Source: Phallusia mammillata (Eukaryota). Taken from it: a DNA stretch of 64,000 bases. The notes beneath the pieces were generated by a model. It did no database searches, was not told where the DNA came from, and saw nothing but the letters and a program-made list of their open reading frames with translations. Positions 18,348 to 25,692 of the stretch are shown in pieces; positions within the stretch are counted from its first letter, which is position 1; the number at the start of each line of letters is the position of its first letter. The translations under genes and the position numbers were made by a program. The stretch spans positions 5,022,001-5,086,000 of the forward strand of contig OZ281500.1 in NCBI GenBank assembly GCA_965637545.1, written 5' to 3'.

Positions 18348-20739
18348 CTATTTCAACCGCACTCGATCTTTGGCAACAATAAACTTTGGGTTTTTGTTGA
18401 CTTTCTTTAGGAACAGCACTTTCAAATCATTTTCAGATTTTATGCGTTGGTCTGCCTCATATGTTGAGTATTCAGCAAGCACCTACCAAATGTTTTGGTT
18501 AAAAAATGATTCGGTTCACAGACAATACATTTCAACGAATTTCAAACCTTTTTCCGCAGCTTTTTGATTGACATTTCCTTGTCAGGTGAGTTCTTTAGGC
18601 ACAAGCGGATTGTTTTGTTCCAAGGAAATTTCTTTGCATTTTCAGTTTGAACAGTCAAGTTTTCGTCTGAGAAAATTAACAGTCTGTTTAGTATGGTTAG
18701 TGATGTCAGGGGTTGCATAAGATATACATAGTTTTAAATCTAAATCATCTACACCAGTGGTTCTTAACCTTTTTTCCTTGCTGCACCCCTTTCAAATCAC
18801 TAACCAATTTTCGCACCCCCTTTCAAATCACTAACCAATTTTAGCTCCCCCTTCTGTAATTGCTTAAATAGAATAGACCTAACCAACCTTAATGATTCAG
18901 CATCCCCGCACCCCCTAGGAACAGTTCTCGCACCCCTTGGGGGTGCGTGCACCCCAGGTTAAGAACCCCTGATCTACACACAGAGAAAAATATTTGTCTT
19001 TTTTGCCGTTGCAGCTACATTTGTATCTGCTAGTGCAATCAACTTTGCAGTGACACACTTTTATAGTTTGTCATGCAAAACAATCCTCAGTGATTTTTGT
19101 AGGGCAAATACTTGTGCAGCCCTGTAAATTATTAACGTTGCCATGGGTTCAAATTCTGATACATGCTACAATTGCCTAAACTTTAAGTGATACATGTAAG
19201 TTTAGGCTTTCTCCAAAGGCATCAAGTAAAACTTTCGACTAGGTAATTATCATTATCTCTTTCATCTGAGTTAGTTACCCTGATCTTCTGTTTCAACATA
19301 AGATTTTTTAGCTGCAGTTTCTTCCCCATTTTCTTCATGCTTTCTCTTTTTGCTTTTCTTTTTCTGTAAAGGTTCTTCTTCAATAGATTTGACATTTTCT
19401 ACAAAACAAAAAGTTTCAATAGACTTGTTGGGTTGTGGCACATTTGCATAGTTGGATTTTTTTGCAAATCCTGTTATTCGCATAATCAGCCTTTTACATA
19501 TTTTTAATAGGGAACATAGAACATTAGCCTATAACTCGTATAAAAAGTCATCCACTTAGGTGCACAACCCAGTTAATAACACAAAATACTTGGCAAATCA
19601 TCTATGCAATAAACTGAAGTCAACTGTAATATAAGTTTTACATCATAATCACACCATATTTAATTTACCTTTGGTTTCAAGTACTGCCGGTTTGTTTGCT
19701 GATGAAAAAATCTCCCAGACATCTTCTGTCAGCTTTGAATCTCTGATTTTTAAACTATTTTTCAAGAAGTTCTGTAACAGTCACAATTAATTGGATTATT
19801 TGTTAAGATATAACTGGGATCCGCCCTGAAGCATCTCGGAAGACAAGCAATACCGTCATATATAGGTGGCGGGCTGATTTGGTATGGCGCCATTAATGGG
19901 CTTGGCGTACTGTGATTAATTAGAATATGTTTTATTTGATGCCACCAACATCAACATTGGCTATCATGACTTGATTAAAATCTTTTGATAAACTGAAGTT
20001 AATTCTTTATTTATTATCCTAGCACGAAATTTGTACAGTTATTGAAATGTTTGAAATACTTACCAAGAACTTTCCTCTCTTTCTTGGAATGTTACTGTAT
20101 TCTTGCAGTTTTTCAAGAAGTTCCTTAACCTTCGGATTGCTTGAACCACATGAAACTGATGCTTGTTCAATCTTCAAAAAATACGTAAGATATTAACCTC
20201 CAAAACCTTATTTGTCCAAGCTCTGTTTTAAATCATGACTTTTTAATTTGCAGATTTATATCAAAAGGTAGATTTAAGCTTCAAATAAGAACCATAAGCT
20301 GTTGCTGCCAGGCATATTGATGTCTTTTAATAACCTTTCAAGAATTGAAAAGGCCATATGACTTCGAAAACAAAGTGGTTCCTAACCCTTTTTATCCAGT
20401 CTTTCTGTTTCTCTTCTCCTTTGTTGGGTTTTGCTTTGAATCCAGAAGCAGAATACTTTTCAACTTCTGATATGCAACTTGTATGGGATTTGTAATCATC
20501 ACCCCTGTGGAAATAAAAAGTAAAAAAAGGTTTATGCTTTACCATAAACACAGTTTAAGAGTGAAACTGTAACAGACTAATTACGGAAAAAAAGAAAATA
20601 TTTTATGGAATACTTACCAAAAGTCTTTTGAACAATCAATGCATGTCAAATATTCACAATTTCTGCATCCACTTGCGTGCTTGTCGACTTTGTTTTTCTT
20701 TAAAGATTCCCCGCAGCCATTACAAGTAAAGAACACCAT
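18348..20739 (-). CDS. LYAR: Cell growth-regulating nucleolar protein LYAR (~274 aa, 7 exons)
   Basis: Exons 20739-20618, 20504-20387, 20171-20064, 19771-19669, 19398-19279, 18666-18548, 18482-18348. N-terminal MVFFTCNGCGESLKKNKVDKH...CIDCSKDFWGDDYKSHTSCISE zinc finger; C-terminal KFPWNKTIRLCLKNSPDKEMSIKKLRKKVLAEY...NKNPKF. Confidence 0.95.
18755..18971. mobile_element. hAT (Charlie-like) MITE in LYAR intron
   Basis: TIRs CAGTGGTTCTTAACC / GGTTAAGAACCCCTG; perfect 8-bp TSD ATCTACAC. Confidence 0.92.
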
Positions 20740-21119
20740 GTTTTTTATTTGAATATTGTTAATGCAAATACAAACGCTTGCCAATTTAACTCGAACACGT
20801 GGGTTATCACCATTAGGGGATTTTTTTACAAACACGTTTTTACTGTTCGATTTTTTGTTTTATGATGGTTATTTTTCTGTTTCAACAAAAAGAAAATGAA
20901 TTATTTATAAACATGCCAAACGTAAGTAATATAATAACAGGTAGTTTGAACAGTAAAACAAAACTTTCAGAAACACTTTCGAAATGTGGCTGTGTTGTTG
21001 AGGATTGGTAACTACCACCATCCAATGAGAACAATGTTTATGCGCGGCCCTTGGTTGTTTGTTGATTGATTGTTAATTGTCGTTGCGTGCGCACTTTACA
21101 TTATCTTTGTTTGTTAAAT

Positions 21120-22375
21120 ATGGTCACCACCTCCACGGTACCGATACATTGGAATTCAGAAACTGAAGTATGTTTGTTTTATGCAATGCGTGGCCAAAAA
21201 CCAGTAGGTAAGTTTCTCAACAAAAATGCACACATGCACACGACGCGGATTGTAGATTAGAAAATTGTTAGGCAAGACAGTAATAAACAAAACTAAAACC
21301 AAGTGTCTGTAAATCTTTATTAAAATACGATGTTTATATTGTTACTTGGTCTCATTAAGGCATCAACAAACACTTTCACATGATGTGTATTCATCGCAAA
21401 TTTTGTGAATCTATTGGACAATCTGTCTCAAGTGAACAACTTTGGGAACATCTTGGAACAATGTACAACCTAAAAGCCCTGGTAAACTATTCATTTCTTT
21501 TGTTACAGTGATTTTACAAACAATTGCTTAGTTTTCACACCTTGTTGTTGTTAGTAATGGGACGAGTATACTTGGTACTCTATATCTAATGATTTCAGTG
21601 GCATCGATATTCGTACTCGGTATTGGTACTCACTTGAAAATCTGGTATCGTCCCATCACTACTAGTTGTTGTTTTTTGACATGACTTGTAACTATTTATG
21701 TGGCCCTCACTAGCTTTATGAAGTAAGCCAATGTTGTATACTTGTTACTTTCAAATTGAAGGAAGTTGTTATTTGCACTGTATCGTTGGCAATTTTGACA
21801 TCGGATTATAAAATAAAATTTACGTTAAACTTTTGCCTTCACACAAACCCACGGACCCTTGAGGTTGAGGGGAGCGGAAAACAAAGTTTGGAATTAACTG
21901 CAATAAGTGAATTTTATATCAAACTGGATGTATCAGTTTATTAACAGGCCCACAGCATGATTATATATGTAAATTGCGGTCCATTGGGATAAAAAGATAT
22001 ATCCCCTTGTCTAAGCCATACAAGCAGTAACTGCAAATTTGTGAACCATACTTTTGCAGGATGAATCAGAGGCTACTCCTTTTAAAAACACAAGATCAGA
22101 ATTTAGATTGCCTCCCGAAATATTGAATTGCAAGAAAGCACAATCCAAATCCACAGTAGATGAAAATGTTGAAGAAGATGAGGGTATGTTTTTCTTTCCT
22201 AGGGCAACTGTTTTCACAAAGCAATTGTTATTTTTTTTATATTTACTAACAATTTTCAGGTCCCCCAGTAAAGGTTCCTACAAAATCAAATCGCAAAAGA
22301 TCGAGACAATCTGCCCCATCAACACCAAACCCATCCAGTCCTGCTGTGCCAACTGTGAAGCGACGAAGGCAATGA
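21120..22375 (+). CDS. MRGBP: MRG/MORF4L-binding protein (NuA4/TIP60 subunit, ~149 aa, 4 exons)
   Basis: Exons 21120-21207, 21360-21481, 22060-22183, 22260-22375. [30 protein letters not shown]...LWEHLGTMYNLKALDESE and C-terminal NPSSP...KRRR match the MRGBP/Eaf7 family. Confidence 0.93.
21552..21661. mobile_element. Short TA-flanked MITE in MRGBP intron 2
   Basis: Ends TAGTAATGGGACGA / TCGTCCCATCACTA (inverted, TA termini). Confidence 0.7.
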
Positions 22376-22814
22376 GCTTCTGATAGGGAATTTGTGAATG
22401 ACTACATTTATGTGATATGTGCTGTCATGTAAATATGGCTGGGCTATCGGATTTGAGTTTTGCACATTGGCTGCATAAAACTAAAACTGACAGTAGTTAC
22501 CATTGCAGGAGCAGGCAGGACTGTTACACACATTGATCCTTCATTTGACTGTGCAACACAATTAAAAACTACAAATAGAATACATAAATTTTCACATACT
22601 GTGTGTGGACTTCGCCTATCATTTTATTTGTTTTATTGCCATAAACATTGGCAAGTAAAATACCTATGAGAAGTTTTTGCCTTTTCAACAACAAACGTCG
22701 GATATTTGCTGTTCTGTTGCACAAGGAAATATAAATCAATACATAACTTTATAAGTGTAATGTATTTATTTCAACATAAACAGGAACTGCAGACTTCATT
22801 GCAGTGTTTTAAAT

Positions 22815-24208
22815 TTAACCGGAACCAGTTATCTGCTGTCTTTGTTGCATTAGGGGTGCAAAAAGTTTTTCCAAGAACTCATCATCAACAACTACACCCA
22901 TCATAATTGCCCTGGAATTGGGCTCAACCCCATAAATTCGTTTCAGCACTAATTTGGCAGCATCTGTTTCAGCTAGCTCTATACTCTCACCAGCGCCTTC
23001 AGTCAAAAACTCTTTTCCAGAATACAAAGCAATGAAAAATACAGGCAATGTTGAGCTTATGCCAGATTGGCGAACAAGCCTAGCTTCAGGTCCTGGTTTG
23101 CCTTGATTCTGCAACTCTTGGGTCAAAATCTTCATTGGGTTCTGTGGTTTCCATATGTCATGCAAAATGTCCTTTCCTATCAGTTGTGGTATAATGAAGT
23201 CCAATATAAACTTTCCAGCAGCAACTGGCCCACCGCTACCCTTGGCAATTGCTTCAATGCTTGCTTGAAATGATTCAGCAAATACTTCACTTGAAGGAGG
23301 AAAGGGACTACATTGTATAAAGTCTTTGTAACCCAAGTTGAAAGCAATGTGGGTCAACTGTTTGGTACTGCACAGATAGTCTAGGATCGCGGATTTTCCC
23401 TCATCACACAGTTTGGGGAAGGATAAGTTAATGTAGTGCTTTACAAATTCATGGATTAAGATATTGCCTTTTGTACACAGACTACTGTAATCAACAACAT
23501 CATCTCTTTCAGGAAGTGGCTGAGTGAATGCTGCTCGAAGATCATCATCAGCAACATCTATTTGAAGGCGCAACCTGGGAAAAATAATAATGTTACAGTG
23601 TCAGGAACTAAATCCTTGAGTGCAGTAGATTTAACAATTTGTTTTAATAATAGTTTCATACTGTGTCTCTCTCACAAACAAGCCTCTCCTATTGCAGAAG
23701 AATTGAAAATAAACTTAATGATAGACTGGCCTCTAACATGCAATCTACTCATGTAAAACATTTAAAAATGTTGATGGTCAGGGTGAGGGTTTGTAATAAC
23801 ATTTTGGGCCAATATTCTTGGGTCTGTGAATAGCCCTAACCAGCAGCATTTTAATAATTTTTTTAGCAGTTAGAATGGATTGCAGGTACCTCTTTTTATG
23901 CAACATGCTGCAGCTTTTCGTCACAAAATTTGAACTTACTTAAATGCAGCAAACTCTGCTTCGTAATTCCAATTTTCTCTCGTAGATCTTGGTTGTTCTG
24001 GTTCCTCTCCTTCTATGTTTTTTTTACGAGCCATGGACAAATACCAATGTTTTTTCCATCTTGCAAACATGATTGAATTTTTGTTAACTGGTTCAAGTTG
24101 AGGATTGCCTGGTTTGGATGTGTATTTTCGTGTACCTTGGGTAGGAGAAGCAAGCATTTGCTTACACAATGGAAATTGCAGCCTTATTATTCGCCGCATG
24201 TTTAACAT
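22815..24208 (-). CDS. MRPL44: Mitochondrial ribosomal protein mL44 (~342 aa, 2 exons)
   Basis: Exon 1 24208-23940 (basic presequence, NWNYEAEFAAF, donor AA|GTAAGT); exon 2 23574-22815 (RNase III-like and dsRBD-like: NPMKILTQEL...PEARLVRQSG...LPVFFIALYSGKEFLTEGAGESIELAETDAAK). Confidence 0.95.
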
Positions 24209-24215
24209 TTTTTGT

Positions 24216-24539
24216 TCACTTTGCGCTGTCTTTCACTTTGTCCAGTTCTTTTTTGAAGCCTGAACAACAAACTTGATTCAGGTATTTGTACTTTTCACAG
24301 CACTTAATTAGATCCGCTATTTCGTTTTGACATTGACTTTCTTGGTACTTGTTTCCTAAAAATAAAAATAAAATTTTTAGACACTTACAATTTACGCATT
24401 TAGCCATTTACTAATTCACATAACAGTTGTTTGCTGCAACTTAATGTGTTATTTTTCAAAGTTTATTTAAATATTACTTACTTTGAAGACAATCTTGGAT
24501 TCTACAGGCGAATGGCAAGCACGGCTCAGTTTTCGGCAT
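24216..24539 (-). CDS. CMC4: Twin Cx9C motif protein CMC4/p8MTCP1 (65 aa, 2 exons)
   Basis: Exon 1 24539-24482 (MPKTEPCLPFACRIQDCLQ, donor A|GTAAG); exon 2 24355-24216 (RNKYQESQCQNEIADLIKCCEKY...VCCSGFKKE...*). Cys spacing and sequence match human CMC4 (MPQKDPCQKQACEIQKCLQANSYMESKCQ...CC...CSGF). Confidence 0.92.
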
Positions 24540-24869
24540 CGCCCAACATTTTTTTCTTGCAAAATCAAAACATGCCTGATGAATTTACGCATCGCTGCAC
24601 ATGTTAGGAATTCGAATACGAGCTGCGTTAATTTTCGGAAAAAATATTATCTAAAACTTAACATTTATTTTGTTATTTGTTACCAAACGCTTGTGCCATA
24701 TAGCTTTCAATTTTTTTCTTTGTGTCTAGATACATTTTTAAGTGATCAAATTGGTACAAAAATATGTCTTAAAAATAAGTTGTCACGTTGCCACAGTAAC
24801 GACGTCGAGAGCAGAAATCGAAAGAACCGGTAGATAGAGTTTGCCGCCGTTTGTAACATTGTTTTTTCT

Positions 24870-24878
24870 CGCCATTTT
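24870..24878 (-). promoter_or_regulatory. YY1-like motif (AAAATGGCG) upstream of CMC4
   Basis: CGCCATTTT in the divergent intergenic region ~330 bp upstream of the CMC4 ATG; short motif, no functional data. Confidence 0.3.
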
Positions 24879-25055
24879 AAGCCGCATTCATGTTTTAAAG
24901 ACCTTTGATAATTTTAGCCTAATTGCTTGTGTGGTTTAGTAGCTGTTCTCCAAAGTGTCAACTTTTCAACATAATGAAATATGACCACTGTGTACAAATG
25001 TCAGAAAATGAGATAAATTTAGTTCACCAGTTATTGAATTTCTGGAAAATTGAAG

Positions 25056-25453
25056 CGGTCACGTCTACAACTGCGGGCCCACTTGGATCACTTGGCTCGC
25101 TTGGCCCAGCACTTGGCTCGCTTCATGCAATTAAAAAACTGCGGGCCCGCTTGGCACGCTTCTCGCAAGTATAAAAACTGCGGACCCACTATATCTAGTG
25201 CTTGGCCCACCTCTCGCAGGGAAAAAACGCGGGCCCACTATATCTAGTGCTTGTCGCGTCTCTCGCAAGGAAAAACTCCGGGCCCACTATATCCAGTGCT
25301 TGTCGCATCTCTCGCAGGGAAAAACCGCGGGCCTATTATATCCAGTGCTTGTCACGTCTCTCGCAAGTATAAAAACTGTGGGCCTGCAGTTTTTTCTATT
25401 GCATGGGGCGGGGCAAGTGCTGGGCCTAGCGGCCGCAGTTTTAGACGTGACTG
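25056..25453. mobile_element. TIR element carrying an internal ~49-bp tandem array
   Basis: Ends C(G/A)GTCACGTCTA(C/A)AACTGCGG inverted; four near-complete units (GCGGGCCCACTATATCYAGTGCTTGTCGCRTCTCTCGCARG..AAAA) plus degenerate copies; no TSD found. Confidence 0.75.
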
Positions 25454-25692
25454 TCTAAGAAGTGCTCAGAATAGGCAATAACACAACTATGCTCCACTGT
25501 TGTGTTATGTTTACTGTTACAATTGCCTGACAGTGCCACTTGTCACACTTTTTTGGTGGTCTGTTTTGCGATTTAAATATAAGTTTCAAAGCTGTTCCTT
25601 TATGGGTAAATGTACAACTTTGCTGCTTAGGAAATCTTGCCCTTAATTTTAATTTCTACTGATATGATATTTGTTCCTGTGTGTTCATCAAA

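What the first reader, a model, noticed from the sequence alone, without database searches (positions are those of the whole stretch)
24199..24539. CMC4 stop codon only 7 nt before the MRPL44 start: candidate bicistronic mRNA for two mitochondrial proteins
Seen: same strand, ...GCA AAG TGA ACAAAAA ATG TTA AAC ATG CGG...; the 7-nt spacer has no AG acceptor and no room for a CMC4 3' UTR or poly(A) signal. Established: ascidian operons are resolved by SL trans-splicing with essentially no intercistronic DNA, and human CMC4 shares a locus and leader with MTCP1. Inference: either a true bicistronic mRNA with reinitiation or leaky scanning (CMC4 as a functional uORF coupling an IMS Cx9C protein to a mitoribosomal protein), or a trans-splice site inside the MRPL44 presequence (AATAAG| or TGTAAG|) that would force a later start (MLASP...) and shorten the targeting peptide.
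Basis: partly seen in the sequence, partly recalled or inferred. Interest (0 to 1): 0.7.

Follow-up and report, generated by a model that had tools for sequence, protein, structure and literature searches.

The report
Conserved tunicate CMC4–mL44 two-gene transcript
In the sea squirt Phallusia mammillata, and in at least five other tunicate lineages, the tiny mitochondrial protein CMC4 and the mitoribosomal protein mL44 lie on one spliced RNA with their stop and start codons overlapping or at most 13 bases apart, so they may be read from a single messenger, but this has not been shown directly.

Summary
On the minus strand, a two-exon CMC4 gene (24539-24216) ends 7 nt before the first ATG (24208) of the two-exon mL44/MRPL44 gene. 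The organism is Phallusia mammillata.

- **RNA evidence.** In four RNA data sets from four studies, one fully spliced contig covers both reading frames. One contig carries a template-switch oligo at 24566, with no spliced leader.
- **Conservation.** Every sampled 31-mer across the junction is present in 14 RNA-like runs. CMC4 sits directly upstream of mL44 in Ciona intestinalis and in five other tunicate data sets (one a close Phallusia relative). The stop-to-start distances are -4 (overlap), 2, 6, 7, 10, 12 and 13 nt. The linkage is absent near mL44 in amphioxus and starfish.
- **Hints of scanning.** ATG triplets are depleted in the CMC4 ORFs (8 seen, 14 expected, P about 0.002). They are not depleted in the mL44 ORFs. 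The mL44 AUG usually has the better context.

My best reading (about 0.45) is a mature bicistronic mRNA, with mL44 translated by leaky scanning or local reinitiation. The main rival (about 0.4) is partial SL trans-splicing, or mutually exclusive processing, of the same precursor. No read-level evidence on SL or poly(A) sites could be obtained.

The parts
24555..24600 (-). 5' end zone of the transcript. Contig ends fall at 24600, 24566, 24557 and 24555. A template-switch oligo abuts 24566, which marks a cDNA 5' end without a spliced leader.
   Evidence: tables 7 and 8. The oligo identity is from my own knowledge of SMART/Nextera sequences.
24526..24549 (-). 7-codon upstream ORF (MLGDAEN) with A at -3. 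It overlaps the CMC4 ATG out of frame. It was not seen in the leaders of the other species.
24482..24539 (-). CMC4 exon 1, from the ATG at 24539 (context gcgATGc).
24356..24481 (-). CMC4 intron, 126 nt, GT..AG. It is removed in all four RNA contigs. The intron position is the same in Ciona.
24216..24355 (-). CMC4 exon 2, including the TGA at 24218-24216. It contains only one internal ATG (24333, out of frame).
24209..24215 (-). 7-nt spacer ACAAAAA with no AG. The block CAAAAAATG is conserved in the close relative L005.
23940..24208 (-). mL44 exon 1. Its first ATG is at 24208 (context aaaATGt) and it encodes a presequence typical of mitochondrial targeting.
23575..23939 (-). mL44 intron, 365 nt. 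It is removed in all four contigs and retained at about 7% in run X1.
22815..23574 (-). mL44 exon 2, carrying the RM44 endonuclease-like and dsRBD domains. The stop TAA is at 22817-22815.
22765..22770 (-). The only canonical AATAAA of the unit. The contigs end 8-70 nt downstream of it (22757, 22734, 22695).

Best explanation
CMC4 and mL44 form one transcription unit that is old within tunicates. **Shown:** there is one 5' end zone near 24566-24600. There are two introns. The only canonical poly(A) signal lies after mL44. A spliced RNA that is continuous through both ORFs is the form assembled from RNA data. **Inferred:** this bicistronic RNA is a mature mRNA and both proteins are made from it. 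CMC4 would be read from a mediocre AUG (never A at -3 and never G at +4 in the five species compared). Ribosomes that pass it would scan about 200 nt of ATG-poor CMC4 sequence to the better-placed mL44 AUG. Ribosomes finishing CMC4 might also restart at the AUG that overlaps the stop or lies up to 13 nt beyond it. In P. mammillata, the 7-codon uORF that overlaps the CMC4 AUG could send further ribosomes past CMC4 to reinitiate at mL44. The result would be fixed-ratio co-expression of an intermembrane-space Cx9C protein and a mitoribosomal protein.
For: 1. In 4 of 4 RNA runs from 4 studies, a single contig with both introns removed runs from 24555-24600 to 22695-22757. In three of these runs the mean depth is only 14-16 and no intron words are seen, so the junction-spanning RNA is not a rare unspliced precursor.
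2. All 12 sampled junction words are present in 14 RNA-like runs.
3. A template-switch oligo lies directly on 24566 with no SL in between.
4. The same CMC4-to-mL44 order is found in Ciona (genome) and in L002, L003, L004, L005 and L012/L013. L002, L003 and L012 are spliced contigs that carry both whole ORFs. The stop-to-first-ATG distances are -4, 2, 6, 7, 10, 12 and 13 nt.
5. These sequences form a 100/100-supported tunicate clade in an mL44 tree.
6. In L012 the TGA and ATG overlap (AATGATG), so no single cut can yield two intact monocistronic mRNAs. In Phallusia and L005 there is no AG between stop and start.
7. There are 8 ATG triplets inside the CMC4 ORFs against 14.1-14.6 expected under synonymous-codon nulls (P = 0.002-0.005). 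Four 65-codon windows of mL44, and whole mL44 ORFs, show no depletion.
8. The mL44 AUG has A at -3 in 5 of 7 species. The CMC4 AUG has it in 0 of 5.
9. There is no AATAAA or ATTAAA between CMC4 and the end of mL44 exon 1.
10. Unresolved dicistronic cDNAs are rare for ordinary Ciona operons: about 11 operons in roughly 680,000 ESTs (PMC1488885).
Against: - Contigs cannot prove that single molecules span both ORFs. Short SL tips are clipped by assemblers, so the absence of SL means little.
- Nearly all tightly spaced same-strand ascidian gene pairs studied so far are SL-resolved operons (PMC1488885, PMC2760879).
- The Ciona junction (AATAAA in the CMC4 coding sequence, then TAG followed at once by TTTAAAATG) fits the classical rule that poly(A) is added at the G of the acceptor AG.
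- L003 has 4 ATGs inside CMC4, so the depletion is not universal. The test rests on 5 short ORFs and lacks a control from non-tunicate CMC4 genes.
- Reinitiation after a 65-codon ORF with a 7-nt gap is inefficient in standard models.
- The CMC4 stop lies 277 nt upstream of an exon junction, a layout that usually invites nonsense-mediated decay.
- One tunicate lineage (the P0007 cluster) has mL44 without CMC4 upstream.
Confidence: 0.45

Rival explanations
1. SL trans-splicing with either/or processing. The bicistronic RNA is in practice the CMC4 mRNA, with the mL44 ORF as a silent 3' part. mL44 is translated from a separate mRNA made when the spliced leader is joined to an AG just upstream of 24208. 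Candidates are AAG|TGA at 24220-24219, the T-rich CAG|G at 24261-24260, or the CMC4 exon 2 acceptor. The CMC4 part is then discarded as an outron. In Ciona, L002, L003 and L004 the classical form is possible, with two abutting monocistronic mRNAs.
For: Ascidian operons are common (about 20% of Ciona genes) and lack intercistronic DNA. 72% of their downstream genes have SL-tagged full-length ESTs (PMC2760879; PMC1488885). Trans-splicing often uses the first cis acceptor (PMC11155486). An AG lies 1-19 nt upstream of the mL44 ATG in every species, and Ciona has AATAAA followed by TAG|. The L013 contig starts within a base or so of the predicted start of CMC4 exon 2, as expected at a branch in the assembly graph.
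Against: No SL letters were seen at any contig end or as a loose end, and the Ciona SL was not found in the fetched contigs. In Phallusia, L005 and L012 the rule 'poly(A) at the acceptor G' would give a CMC4 mRNA without a stop codon. This model does not predict the ATG depletion in CMC4 or the conserved spacing of 13 nt or less. The sequence upstream of AAG|TGA is purine-rich, which makes a poor acceptor.
Confidence: 0.4
2. The trans-splice acceptor lies inside the annotated mL44 presequence (AATAAG| at 24184-24183 or TGTAAG| at 24162-24161). AATAAT at 24191 serves as a variant poly(A) signal for CMC4. mL44 then starts at M18 (24157, MLASP...).
For: AATAAT lies 25 nt before the G of TGTAAG, and the T-rich stretch TTTCCATTGTG precedes that AG. 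The block TAAGGCTGCAA is identical in L005.
Against: In L005 the M18 codon is missing and TGTAAG reads TATAAT. The first 17 codons keep both ATGs and show synonymous changes (L2, R6, L14) and only 3-nt indels, which indicates that they are translated. In all seven species the first in-frame ATG directly follows or overlaps the CMC4 stop and opens a basic, acid-free presequence.
Confidence: 0.06
3. Two independent transcripts. An internal promoter for mL44 lies inside the CMC4 gene, and a CMC4 3' UTR overlaps the start of mL44. The single contig is then only an assembly merge of two overlapping RNAs.
For: A contig across two genes does not prove a single molecule (caveat printed).
Against: There is no room for a promoter between ORFs that overlap or lie up to 13 nt apart in seven lineages. 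In X1 the two contigs have equal depth: 62 for CMC4 plus mL44 exon 1, and 60 for mL44 exon 2. No poly(A) signal is available for CMC4. The arrangement has been kept since at least the Ciona-Phallusia split, about 270 My ago (10.1101/371005).
Confidence: 0.06

Closest known systems
Ciona-type SL-resolved operons without intercistronic DNA (Satou et al. 2006, PMC1488885; 2008, PMC2760879)
   Same: These are same-strand, directly abutting genes in an ascidian with a single upstream promoter zone. Dicistronic RNA is detectable. The Ciona orthologue's junction (TAG directly before TTTAAAATG) fits the rule.
   Different: Here it is the coding regions, not only the mRNAs, that nearly touch or overlap. 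In Phallusia, L005 and L012 no AG lies between stop and start, so the classical cut would destroy one ORF. The dicistronic RNA is the form assembled in every run rather than a rarity. SL use was not shown.
C. elegans SL1-type operons (cited in PMC1488885 as operons with little or no intercistronic sequence)
   Same: There is no intercistronic space, so 3' end formation of the upstream mRNA and trans-splicing of the downstream one compete for the same precursor.
   Different: Those operons carry a canonical AAUAAA for the upstream gene and have ordinary UTRs. Here CMC4 in Phallusia has no such signal, and stop and start are 7 nt apart.
Vertebrate CMC4/MTCP1 locus (PMC8566464)
   Same: The same small Cx9C gene shares a transcription unit and a 5' leader with an unrelated second gene.
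   Different: In vertebrates the two ORFs are chosen by alternative splicing (MTCP1 lies in CMC4 intron 1), and the partner is not mitochondrial. In tunicates the two ORFs are in tandem on one spliced RNA and the partner is mL44.
Eukaryotic bicistronic mRNAs read by leaky scanning or reinitiation (examples from my own knowledge: MOCS2A/2B, SNURF-SNRPN, the MIEF1 upstream ORF protein of the mitoribosome, Drosophila dicistronic genes)
   Same: A short upstream ORF has a suboptimal AUG. Few AUGs lie before the second start. Both products act in one compartment.
   Different: None of these pairs CMC4 with mL44. No such conserved case in tunicates turned up in the papers searched. Translation was not tested here.
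Termination-reinitiation with overlapping stop/start, as in caliciviruses and influenza B segment 7 (own knowledge), and 80S-mediated reinitiation in yeast (PMC11952965)
   Same: Stop and restart codons overlap (ATGA in L012) or lie within 13 nt.
   Different: The TURBS motif 1 (UGGGA) is absent from the last 120 nt of CMC4 in 6 of 7 species.

Membership tests
CMC4 (Pfam PF08991, Cx9C motif-containing protein 4) | Profile match above the curated cut-off of 28.9 bits | tested here: met
   Phallusia exon 2 alone scores 29.2 bits. The whole ORFs of the orthologues score 56.9 (L003), 55.0 (L012) and 46.0 (L002) bits. The orthologues are 49-63% identical to the Phallusia protein.
mL44 / MRPL44 | RM44 endonuclease-like domain plus the MRPL44 dsRNA-binding domain | tested here: met
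   PF22935 scores 72.5 bits and PF22892 scores 31.3 bits. The protein is 98% identical to UniRef mL44 of Phallusia mammillata.
Ciona-type SL-resolved operon | Same-strand genes less than 100 bp apart under one upstream promoter | tested here: met
   The gap is 7 nt. A single 5' end zone lies upstream of CMC4.
Ciona-type SL-resolved operon | The downstream mRNA carries the 16-nt spliced leader at an AG acceptor | tested here: inconclusive
   Only assembled contigs were available, and they showed no SL loose end. Assemblers clip such short tips. No raw reads were served.
Ciona-type SL-resolved operon | Poly(A) of the upstream mRNA is added at the G of the acceptor AG, leaving both cistrons intact | tested here: not met
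   This is judged from sequence only. There is no AG between TGA and ATG in Phallusia or L005, and stop and start overlap in L012. The feature is met by sequence in Ciona (TAG|), L002, L003 and L004.
Bicistronic mRNA translated by leaky scanning | A mature spliced RNA contains both ORFs | tested here: inconclusive
   Spliced contigs span both ORFs in 4 of 4 runs and in 3 other species, and one carries a template-switch oligo at its 5' end. Single-molecule continuity and a poly(A) tail were not shown.
Bicistronic mRNA translated by leaky scanning | Suboptimal first AUG and a scarcity of AUGs before the second start | tested here: met
   The CMC4 AUG has G, T, C, G, G at -3 and never G at +4. 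There are 8 ATGs against about 14 expected (P = 0.002-0.005). The mL44 controls are not depleted. L003 is an exception.
Bicistronic mRNA translated by leaky scanning | The second protein is made from the bicistronic RNA | not testable with these tools
   This needs ribosome profiling or reporter assays.
TURBS-dependent termination-reinitiation | An 18S-complementary motif 1 (UGGGA) lies upstream of a stop/start overlap | tested here: not met
   TGGGA is absent from the last 120 nt of CMC4 in 6 of 7 species.

The most novel reading that the evidence does not exclude
This is a truly bicistronic chordate mRNA kept since before the Ciona-Phallusia split (about 270 My). One capped, spliced messenger yields both the intermembrane-space Cx9C protein CMC4 and the mitoribosomal protein mL44. 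Translation of mL44 relies on leaky scanning through an ATG-poor CMC4 ORF, on restart at a start codon that overlaps or nearly touches the CMC4 stop, or on both. It does not rely on the spliced-leader trans-splicing that resolves other ascidian operons.
Probability: 0.4. Interest if true: 0.75.

Novelty: new variant of a known kind. Interest (0 to 1): 0.58.

Why it matters
Ascidian operons are thought to be resolved into monocistronic mRNAs by spliced-leader trans-splicing. This pair has coding regions that overlap or lie within 13 nt in lineages spanning the tunicate clade sampled here. In three of the seven sequences the classical cut would destroy one ORF. This makes it a concrete test case for two questions. 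First, do chordate ribosomes translate a natural bicistronic mRNA? Second, how do operon processing and translation trade off? It would also link the supply of a small intermembrane-space protein to the supply of a mitoribosomal protein. On the practical side, CMC4 is missing from the NCBI gene calls at the Ciona locus. It is also missing from the Phallusia protein set, probably because only the longest ORF per transcript was annotated. Small upstream cistrons like this one are therefore likely to be under-annotated in tunicates.

Tried and rejected
- **Exact-protein look-up.** The look-up of the Phallusia mL44 in public assemblies found nothing on record. A word search with CMC4 exon 2 found no candidates. 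Phallusia transcript contigs could therefore not be fetched, and monocistronic CMC4 or SL-mL44 contigs could not be sought.
- **Spliced leader search.** The Ciona SL (ATTCTATTTGAATAAG, PMC7986045) has no match in the window with up to 2 mismatches. It is also absent from the fetched contigs.
- **Conserved acceptor in the Cys-Cys-x-Gly codons of CMC4.** Phallusia has TTGTTGTTCAG|G there. I rejected it as a general feature because Ciona and L003 use TCT for the serine, which gives no AG.
- **TURBS motif.** It is absent.
- **CMC4 near mL44 in outgroups.** Amphioxus and starfish give only chance-level hits. The best amphioxus hit has no Met, no splice donor and no second exon.
- **Supplementary operon tables of Satou 2006.** They are not held, so I could not check whether the Ciona pair is already listed as an operon.
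- **Run accessions.** A search for the run accessions in papers found nothing, so L002-L005 and L012 remain unnamed species. They are placed only by the mL44 tree.
- **In-frame readthrough fusion.** CMC4 and mL44 share a frame in Ciona and L002 only, so I rejected this as a general mechanism.

Full report
**What is at the coordinates.**
- On the minus strand there is a two-exon CMC4 gene. Its ATG is at 24539. Exon 1 is 24539-24482. A 126-nt GT..AG intron spans 24481-24356. Exon 2 is 24355-24216, with TGA at 24218-24216. The protein is 65 aa.
- Exon 2 alone reaches the Pfam CMC4 threshold. The whole-length orthologues score 46-57 bits.
- After the spacer ACAAAAA (24215-24209) comes the first ATG (24208) of a two-exon mL44/MRPL44 gene. 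Exon 1 is 24208-23940, the intron is 365 nt, and exon 2 is 23574-22815. The 342-aa protein has RM44_endonuclease and DSRM_MRPL44 domains.
- The protein is 98% identical to the UniRef mL44 of Phallusia mammillata, which starts at the same ATG. This names the organism.
- The spacer has no AG. There is no AATAAA or ATTAAA anywhere between the CMC4 intron and the end of mL44 exon 1. The only canonical signal of the unit is at 22770-22765, after the mL44 stop.

**RNA evidence.**
- Only assembled contigs of public runs were served, not raw reads. I laid four runs from four studies on 22600-25000.
- Each run gave one contig with both introns removed. The skipped segments end in GT..AG, so these runs are RNA. 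Each contig runs from 24555-24600 through CMC4, the spacer and mL44 to 22695-22757.
- In three of the runs the mean word depth is only 14-16 and no intron words are present. In the deepest run (X1) the mL44 intron is retained at about 7%. The junction-spanning RNA is therefore not a trace of unspliced precursor.
- In run X3 the contig continues beyond 24566 into 28 letters that I recognise as the end of a Nextera adapter plus a SMART template-switch oligo ending in GGG. That recognition rests on my own knowledge. It marks a cDNA 5' end 27 nt upstream of the CMC4 ATG, with no spliced leader in between.
- A second search with the 161-nt junction stretch found all 12 sampled 31-mers in 14 RNA-like runs of the same four studies.
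- The limits are real. A contig across two genes does not prove a single molecule. A 16-nt SL tip would be clipped by the assembler. Poly(A) ends were not captured even at the true 3' end.

**Comparison with other tunicates.**
- A full HMMER search with the Phallusia mL44 and exact look-ups yielded seven loci:
  - the Ciona intestinalis genomic locus (L001);
  - four transcript contigs from unnamed species (L002, L003, L004, L012);
  - a second contig of the L012 species (L013);
  - a genomic contig of a close Phallusia relative (L005).
- In an mL44 tree these sequences form a clade with Phallusia and Ciona at 100/100 support, apart from amphioxus, vertebrates, echinoderms and protostomes.
- In every one of them CMC4 lies directly upstream of mL44 on the same strand. 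L002, L003 and L012 carry both complete ORFs on one spliced contig.
- Taking the first in-frame ATG in each, the stop-to-start distances are:

| Sequence | Distance (nt) | Note |
|---|---|---|
| L012 | -4 | TGA and ATG share letters (AATGATG) |
| L004 | 2 | |
| Ciona | 6 | |
| Phallusia | 7 | |
| L005 | 10 | |
| L002 | 12 | |
| L003 | 13 | |

- Ciona and Phallusia diverged about 270 My ago (10.1101/371005).
- The CMC4 intron position is the same in Ciona. So is the downstream neighbourhood: an opposite-strand Eaf7-type gene and then LYAR.
- No CMC4 lies within 10 kb of mL44 in starfish or amphioxus.
- One tunicate lineage known only from marine metatranscriptomes (the P0007 cluster) has mL44 without CMC4 upstream.
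- The NCBI gene calls for Ciona do not include CMC4 at this locus.

**Where does mL44 start?**
- Phallusia and L005 are 79% identical in DNA across the junction.
- The first 17 codons keep both ATGs (M1 and M4). They show synonymous changes at L2, R6 and L14, conservative I-to-L changes, and only 3-nt indels.
- In all seven sequences the ORF opens at the first ATG after the CMC4 stop with a basic, acid-free presequence.
- The start at 24208, or at 24199, is therefore the likely one. The 5' end of whatever RNA is translated into mL44 must lie at or upstream of the CMC4 stop codon.

**How the two ORFs are expressed.**
- Ascidian biology sets a strong prior for SL trans-splicing. About 20% of Ciona genes lie in operons without intercistronic DNA. 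Poly(A) is added to the G of the acceptor AG (PMC1488885; PMC2760879).
- The Ciona junction fits this rule by sequence: AATAAA lies inside the last CMC4 codons, followed by TAG and then TTTAAAATG.
- In Phallusia and L005 the only nearby AG precedes the stop codon (AAG|TGA). In L012 stop and start overlap. The classical cut would leave CMC4 without a stop codon or mL44 without a start codon.
- Two models remain:
  - **(a)** The bicistronic RNA is a mature mRNA and both ORFs are translated from it.
  - **(b)** The bicistronic RNA serves CMC4 only. A fraction of precursors is trans-spliced at an AG in the 3' part of CMC4, which discards CMC4 as an outron and yields an SL-mL44 mRNA.
- Three indirect observations favour (a).
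  1. Unresolved dicistronic cDNAs are rare for ordinary Ciona operons. Here the bicistronic form is what every data set assembles.
  2. The stop-to-start spacing has stayed at or below 13 nt in seven sequences. Model (b) does not require this.
  3. ATG triplets inside the CMC4 ORFs are depleted.
     - 8 are observed in five species.
     - 14.6 are expected when synonymous codons are resampled (P = 0.005).
     - 14.1 are expected when synonymous codons are only permuted within each gene (P = 0.002).
     - The mL44 ORFs of the same transcripts are not depleted, either as a whole (80 observed against 65 expected) or in four 65-codon windows.
- The AUG contexts point the same way. The CMC4 AUG never has A at -3 or G at +4 in five species. 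The mL44 AUG has A at -3 in five of seven.
- These are the marks expected if scanning ribosomes must cross CMC4 to reach mL44.
- There are counterpoints:
  - L003 has four internal ATGs.
  - The sample is small.
  - I could not run the control on non-tunicate CMC4 genes.
  - The TURBS motif of viral termination-reinitiation is absent.
  - The CMC4 stop lies 277 nt upstream of an exon junction.

**Verdict.**
This is a conserved tunicate CMC4-mL44 transcription unit with nearly touching or overlapping ORFs.
- I put about 0.45 on translation of both proteins from the bicistronic mRNA, mainly by leaky scanning and possibly with local restart.
- I put about 0.4 on SL trans-splicing with either/or processing.
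- The library of papers searched holds nothing on this gene pair in tunicates.
- The decisive data are read-level SL and poly(A) junctions, long-read cDNA, ribosome profiling and reporter mRNAs.
- No N stretches occur in the window.

Noticed in passing
window 24526-24549 (-): A 7-codon upstream ORF (ATG at 24549, A at -3) overlaps the CMC4 ATG out of frame and ends 11 nt after it. After so short an ORF, ribosomes could bypass CMC4 and restart at mL44. No counterpart was seen in the L003 or L012 leaders.
   Followed up: partly
window 24556-24570 (-): The T-rich tract TTTTGATTTTGCAAG ends in an AG at 24557-24556. Two contigs end at 24557 and 24555. This could be a spliced-leader acceptor for the first cistron, but the oligo-marked 5' end at 24566 shows that at least some RNA is not trans-spliced.
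   Followed up: no
window 25112-25384: A tandem array of a 49-nt unit (about 4.7 copies, 83% matches) lies about 550-800 nt upstream of the CMC4 5' end, between this unit and a plus-strand ORF at 25681. Its function is unknown.
   Followed up: partly
window 19222-22383; L001:6610-10446: Microsynteny with Ciona is kept. After mL44 comes an opposite-strand gene with an Eaf7-like exon (window 21066-21260, which matches the Ciona Eaf7 gene region by tblastn). Then comes LYAR on the mL44 strand (zf-LYAR exons at 20835-20327).
   Followed up: partly
window 22600-22760: In run X1 one RNA contig runs from mL44 exon 2 past its poly(A) signal into the convergent plus-strand gene's 3' end. In the other three runs the contigs stop at 22757-22695, and a second contig starts at 22709-22638. 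The two genes' 3' ends overlap or nearly touch.
   Followed up: no
L001:4516-4994 (Ciona intestinalis AP043568.1): A complete two-exon CMC4 gene lies here but is absent from the gene calls listed for this NCBI assembly. Likewise, no Phallusia CMC4 protein exists in the searched protein collection. Small upstream cistrons seem to be missed by annotation.
   Followed up: partly
L013:1-10 (ERR6349557): The contig begins within a base or so of where CMC4 exon 2 should start, judging by the intron position in Ciona and Phallusia. This is what a fork in the assembly graph at that acceptor would give, caused either by intron retention or by a spliced leader joined to exon 2.
   Followed up: no
L008-L011 (marine metagenome and metatranscriptome contigs): An mL44 that groups inside the tunicate clade (the P0007 cluster) has no CMC4 in the 151-609 nt upstream. 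The linkage is therefore not universal in tunicates.
   Followed up: partly
window 24125-24285, study P6 runs: The four runs of study P6 hold only 9 of the 12 junction words. This is consistent with a single polymorphism, such as the I7M difference between the window and the UniRef protein, or with a break in their contigs. It was not resolved.
   Followed up: no
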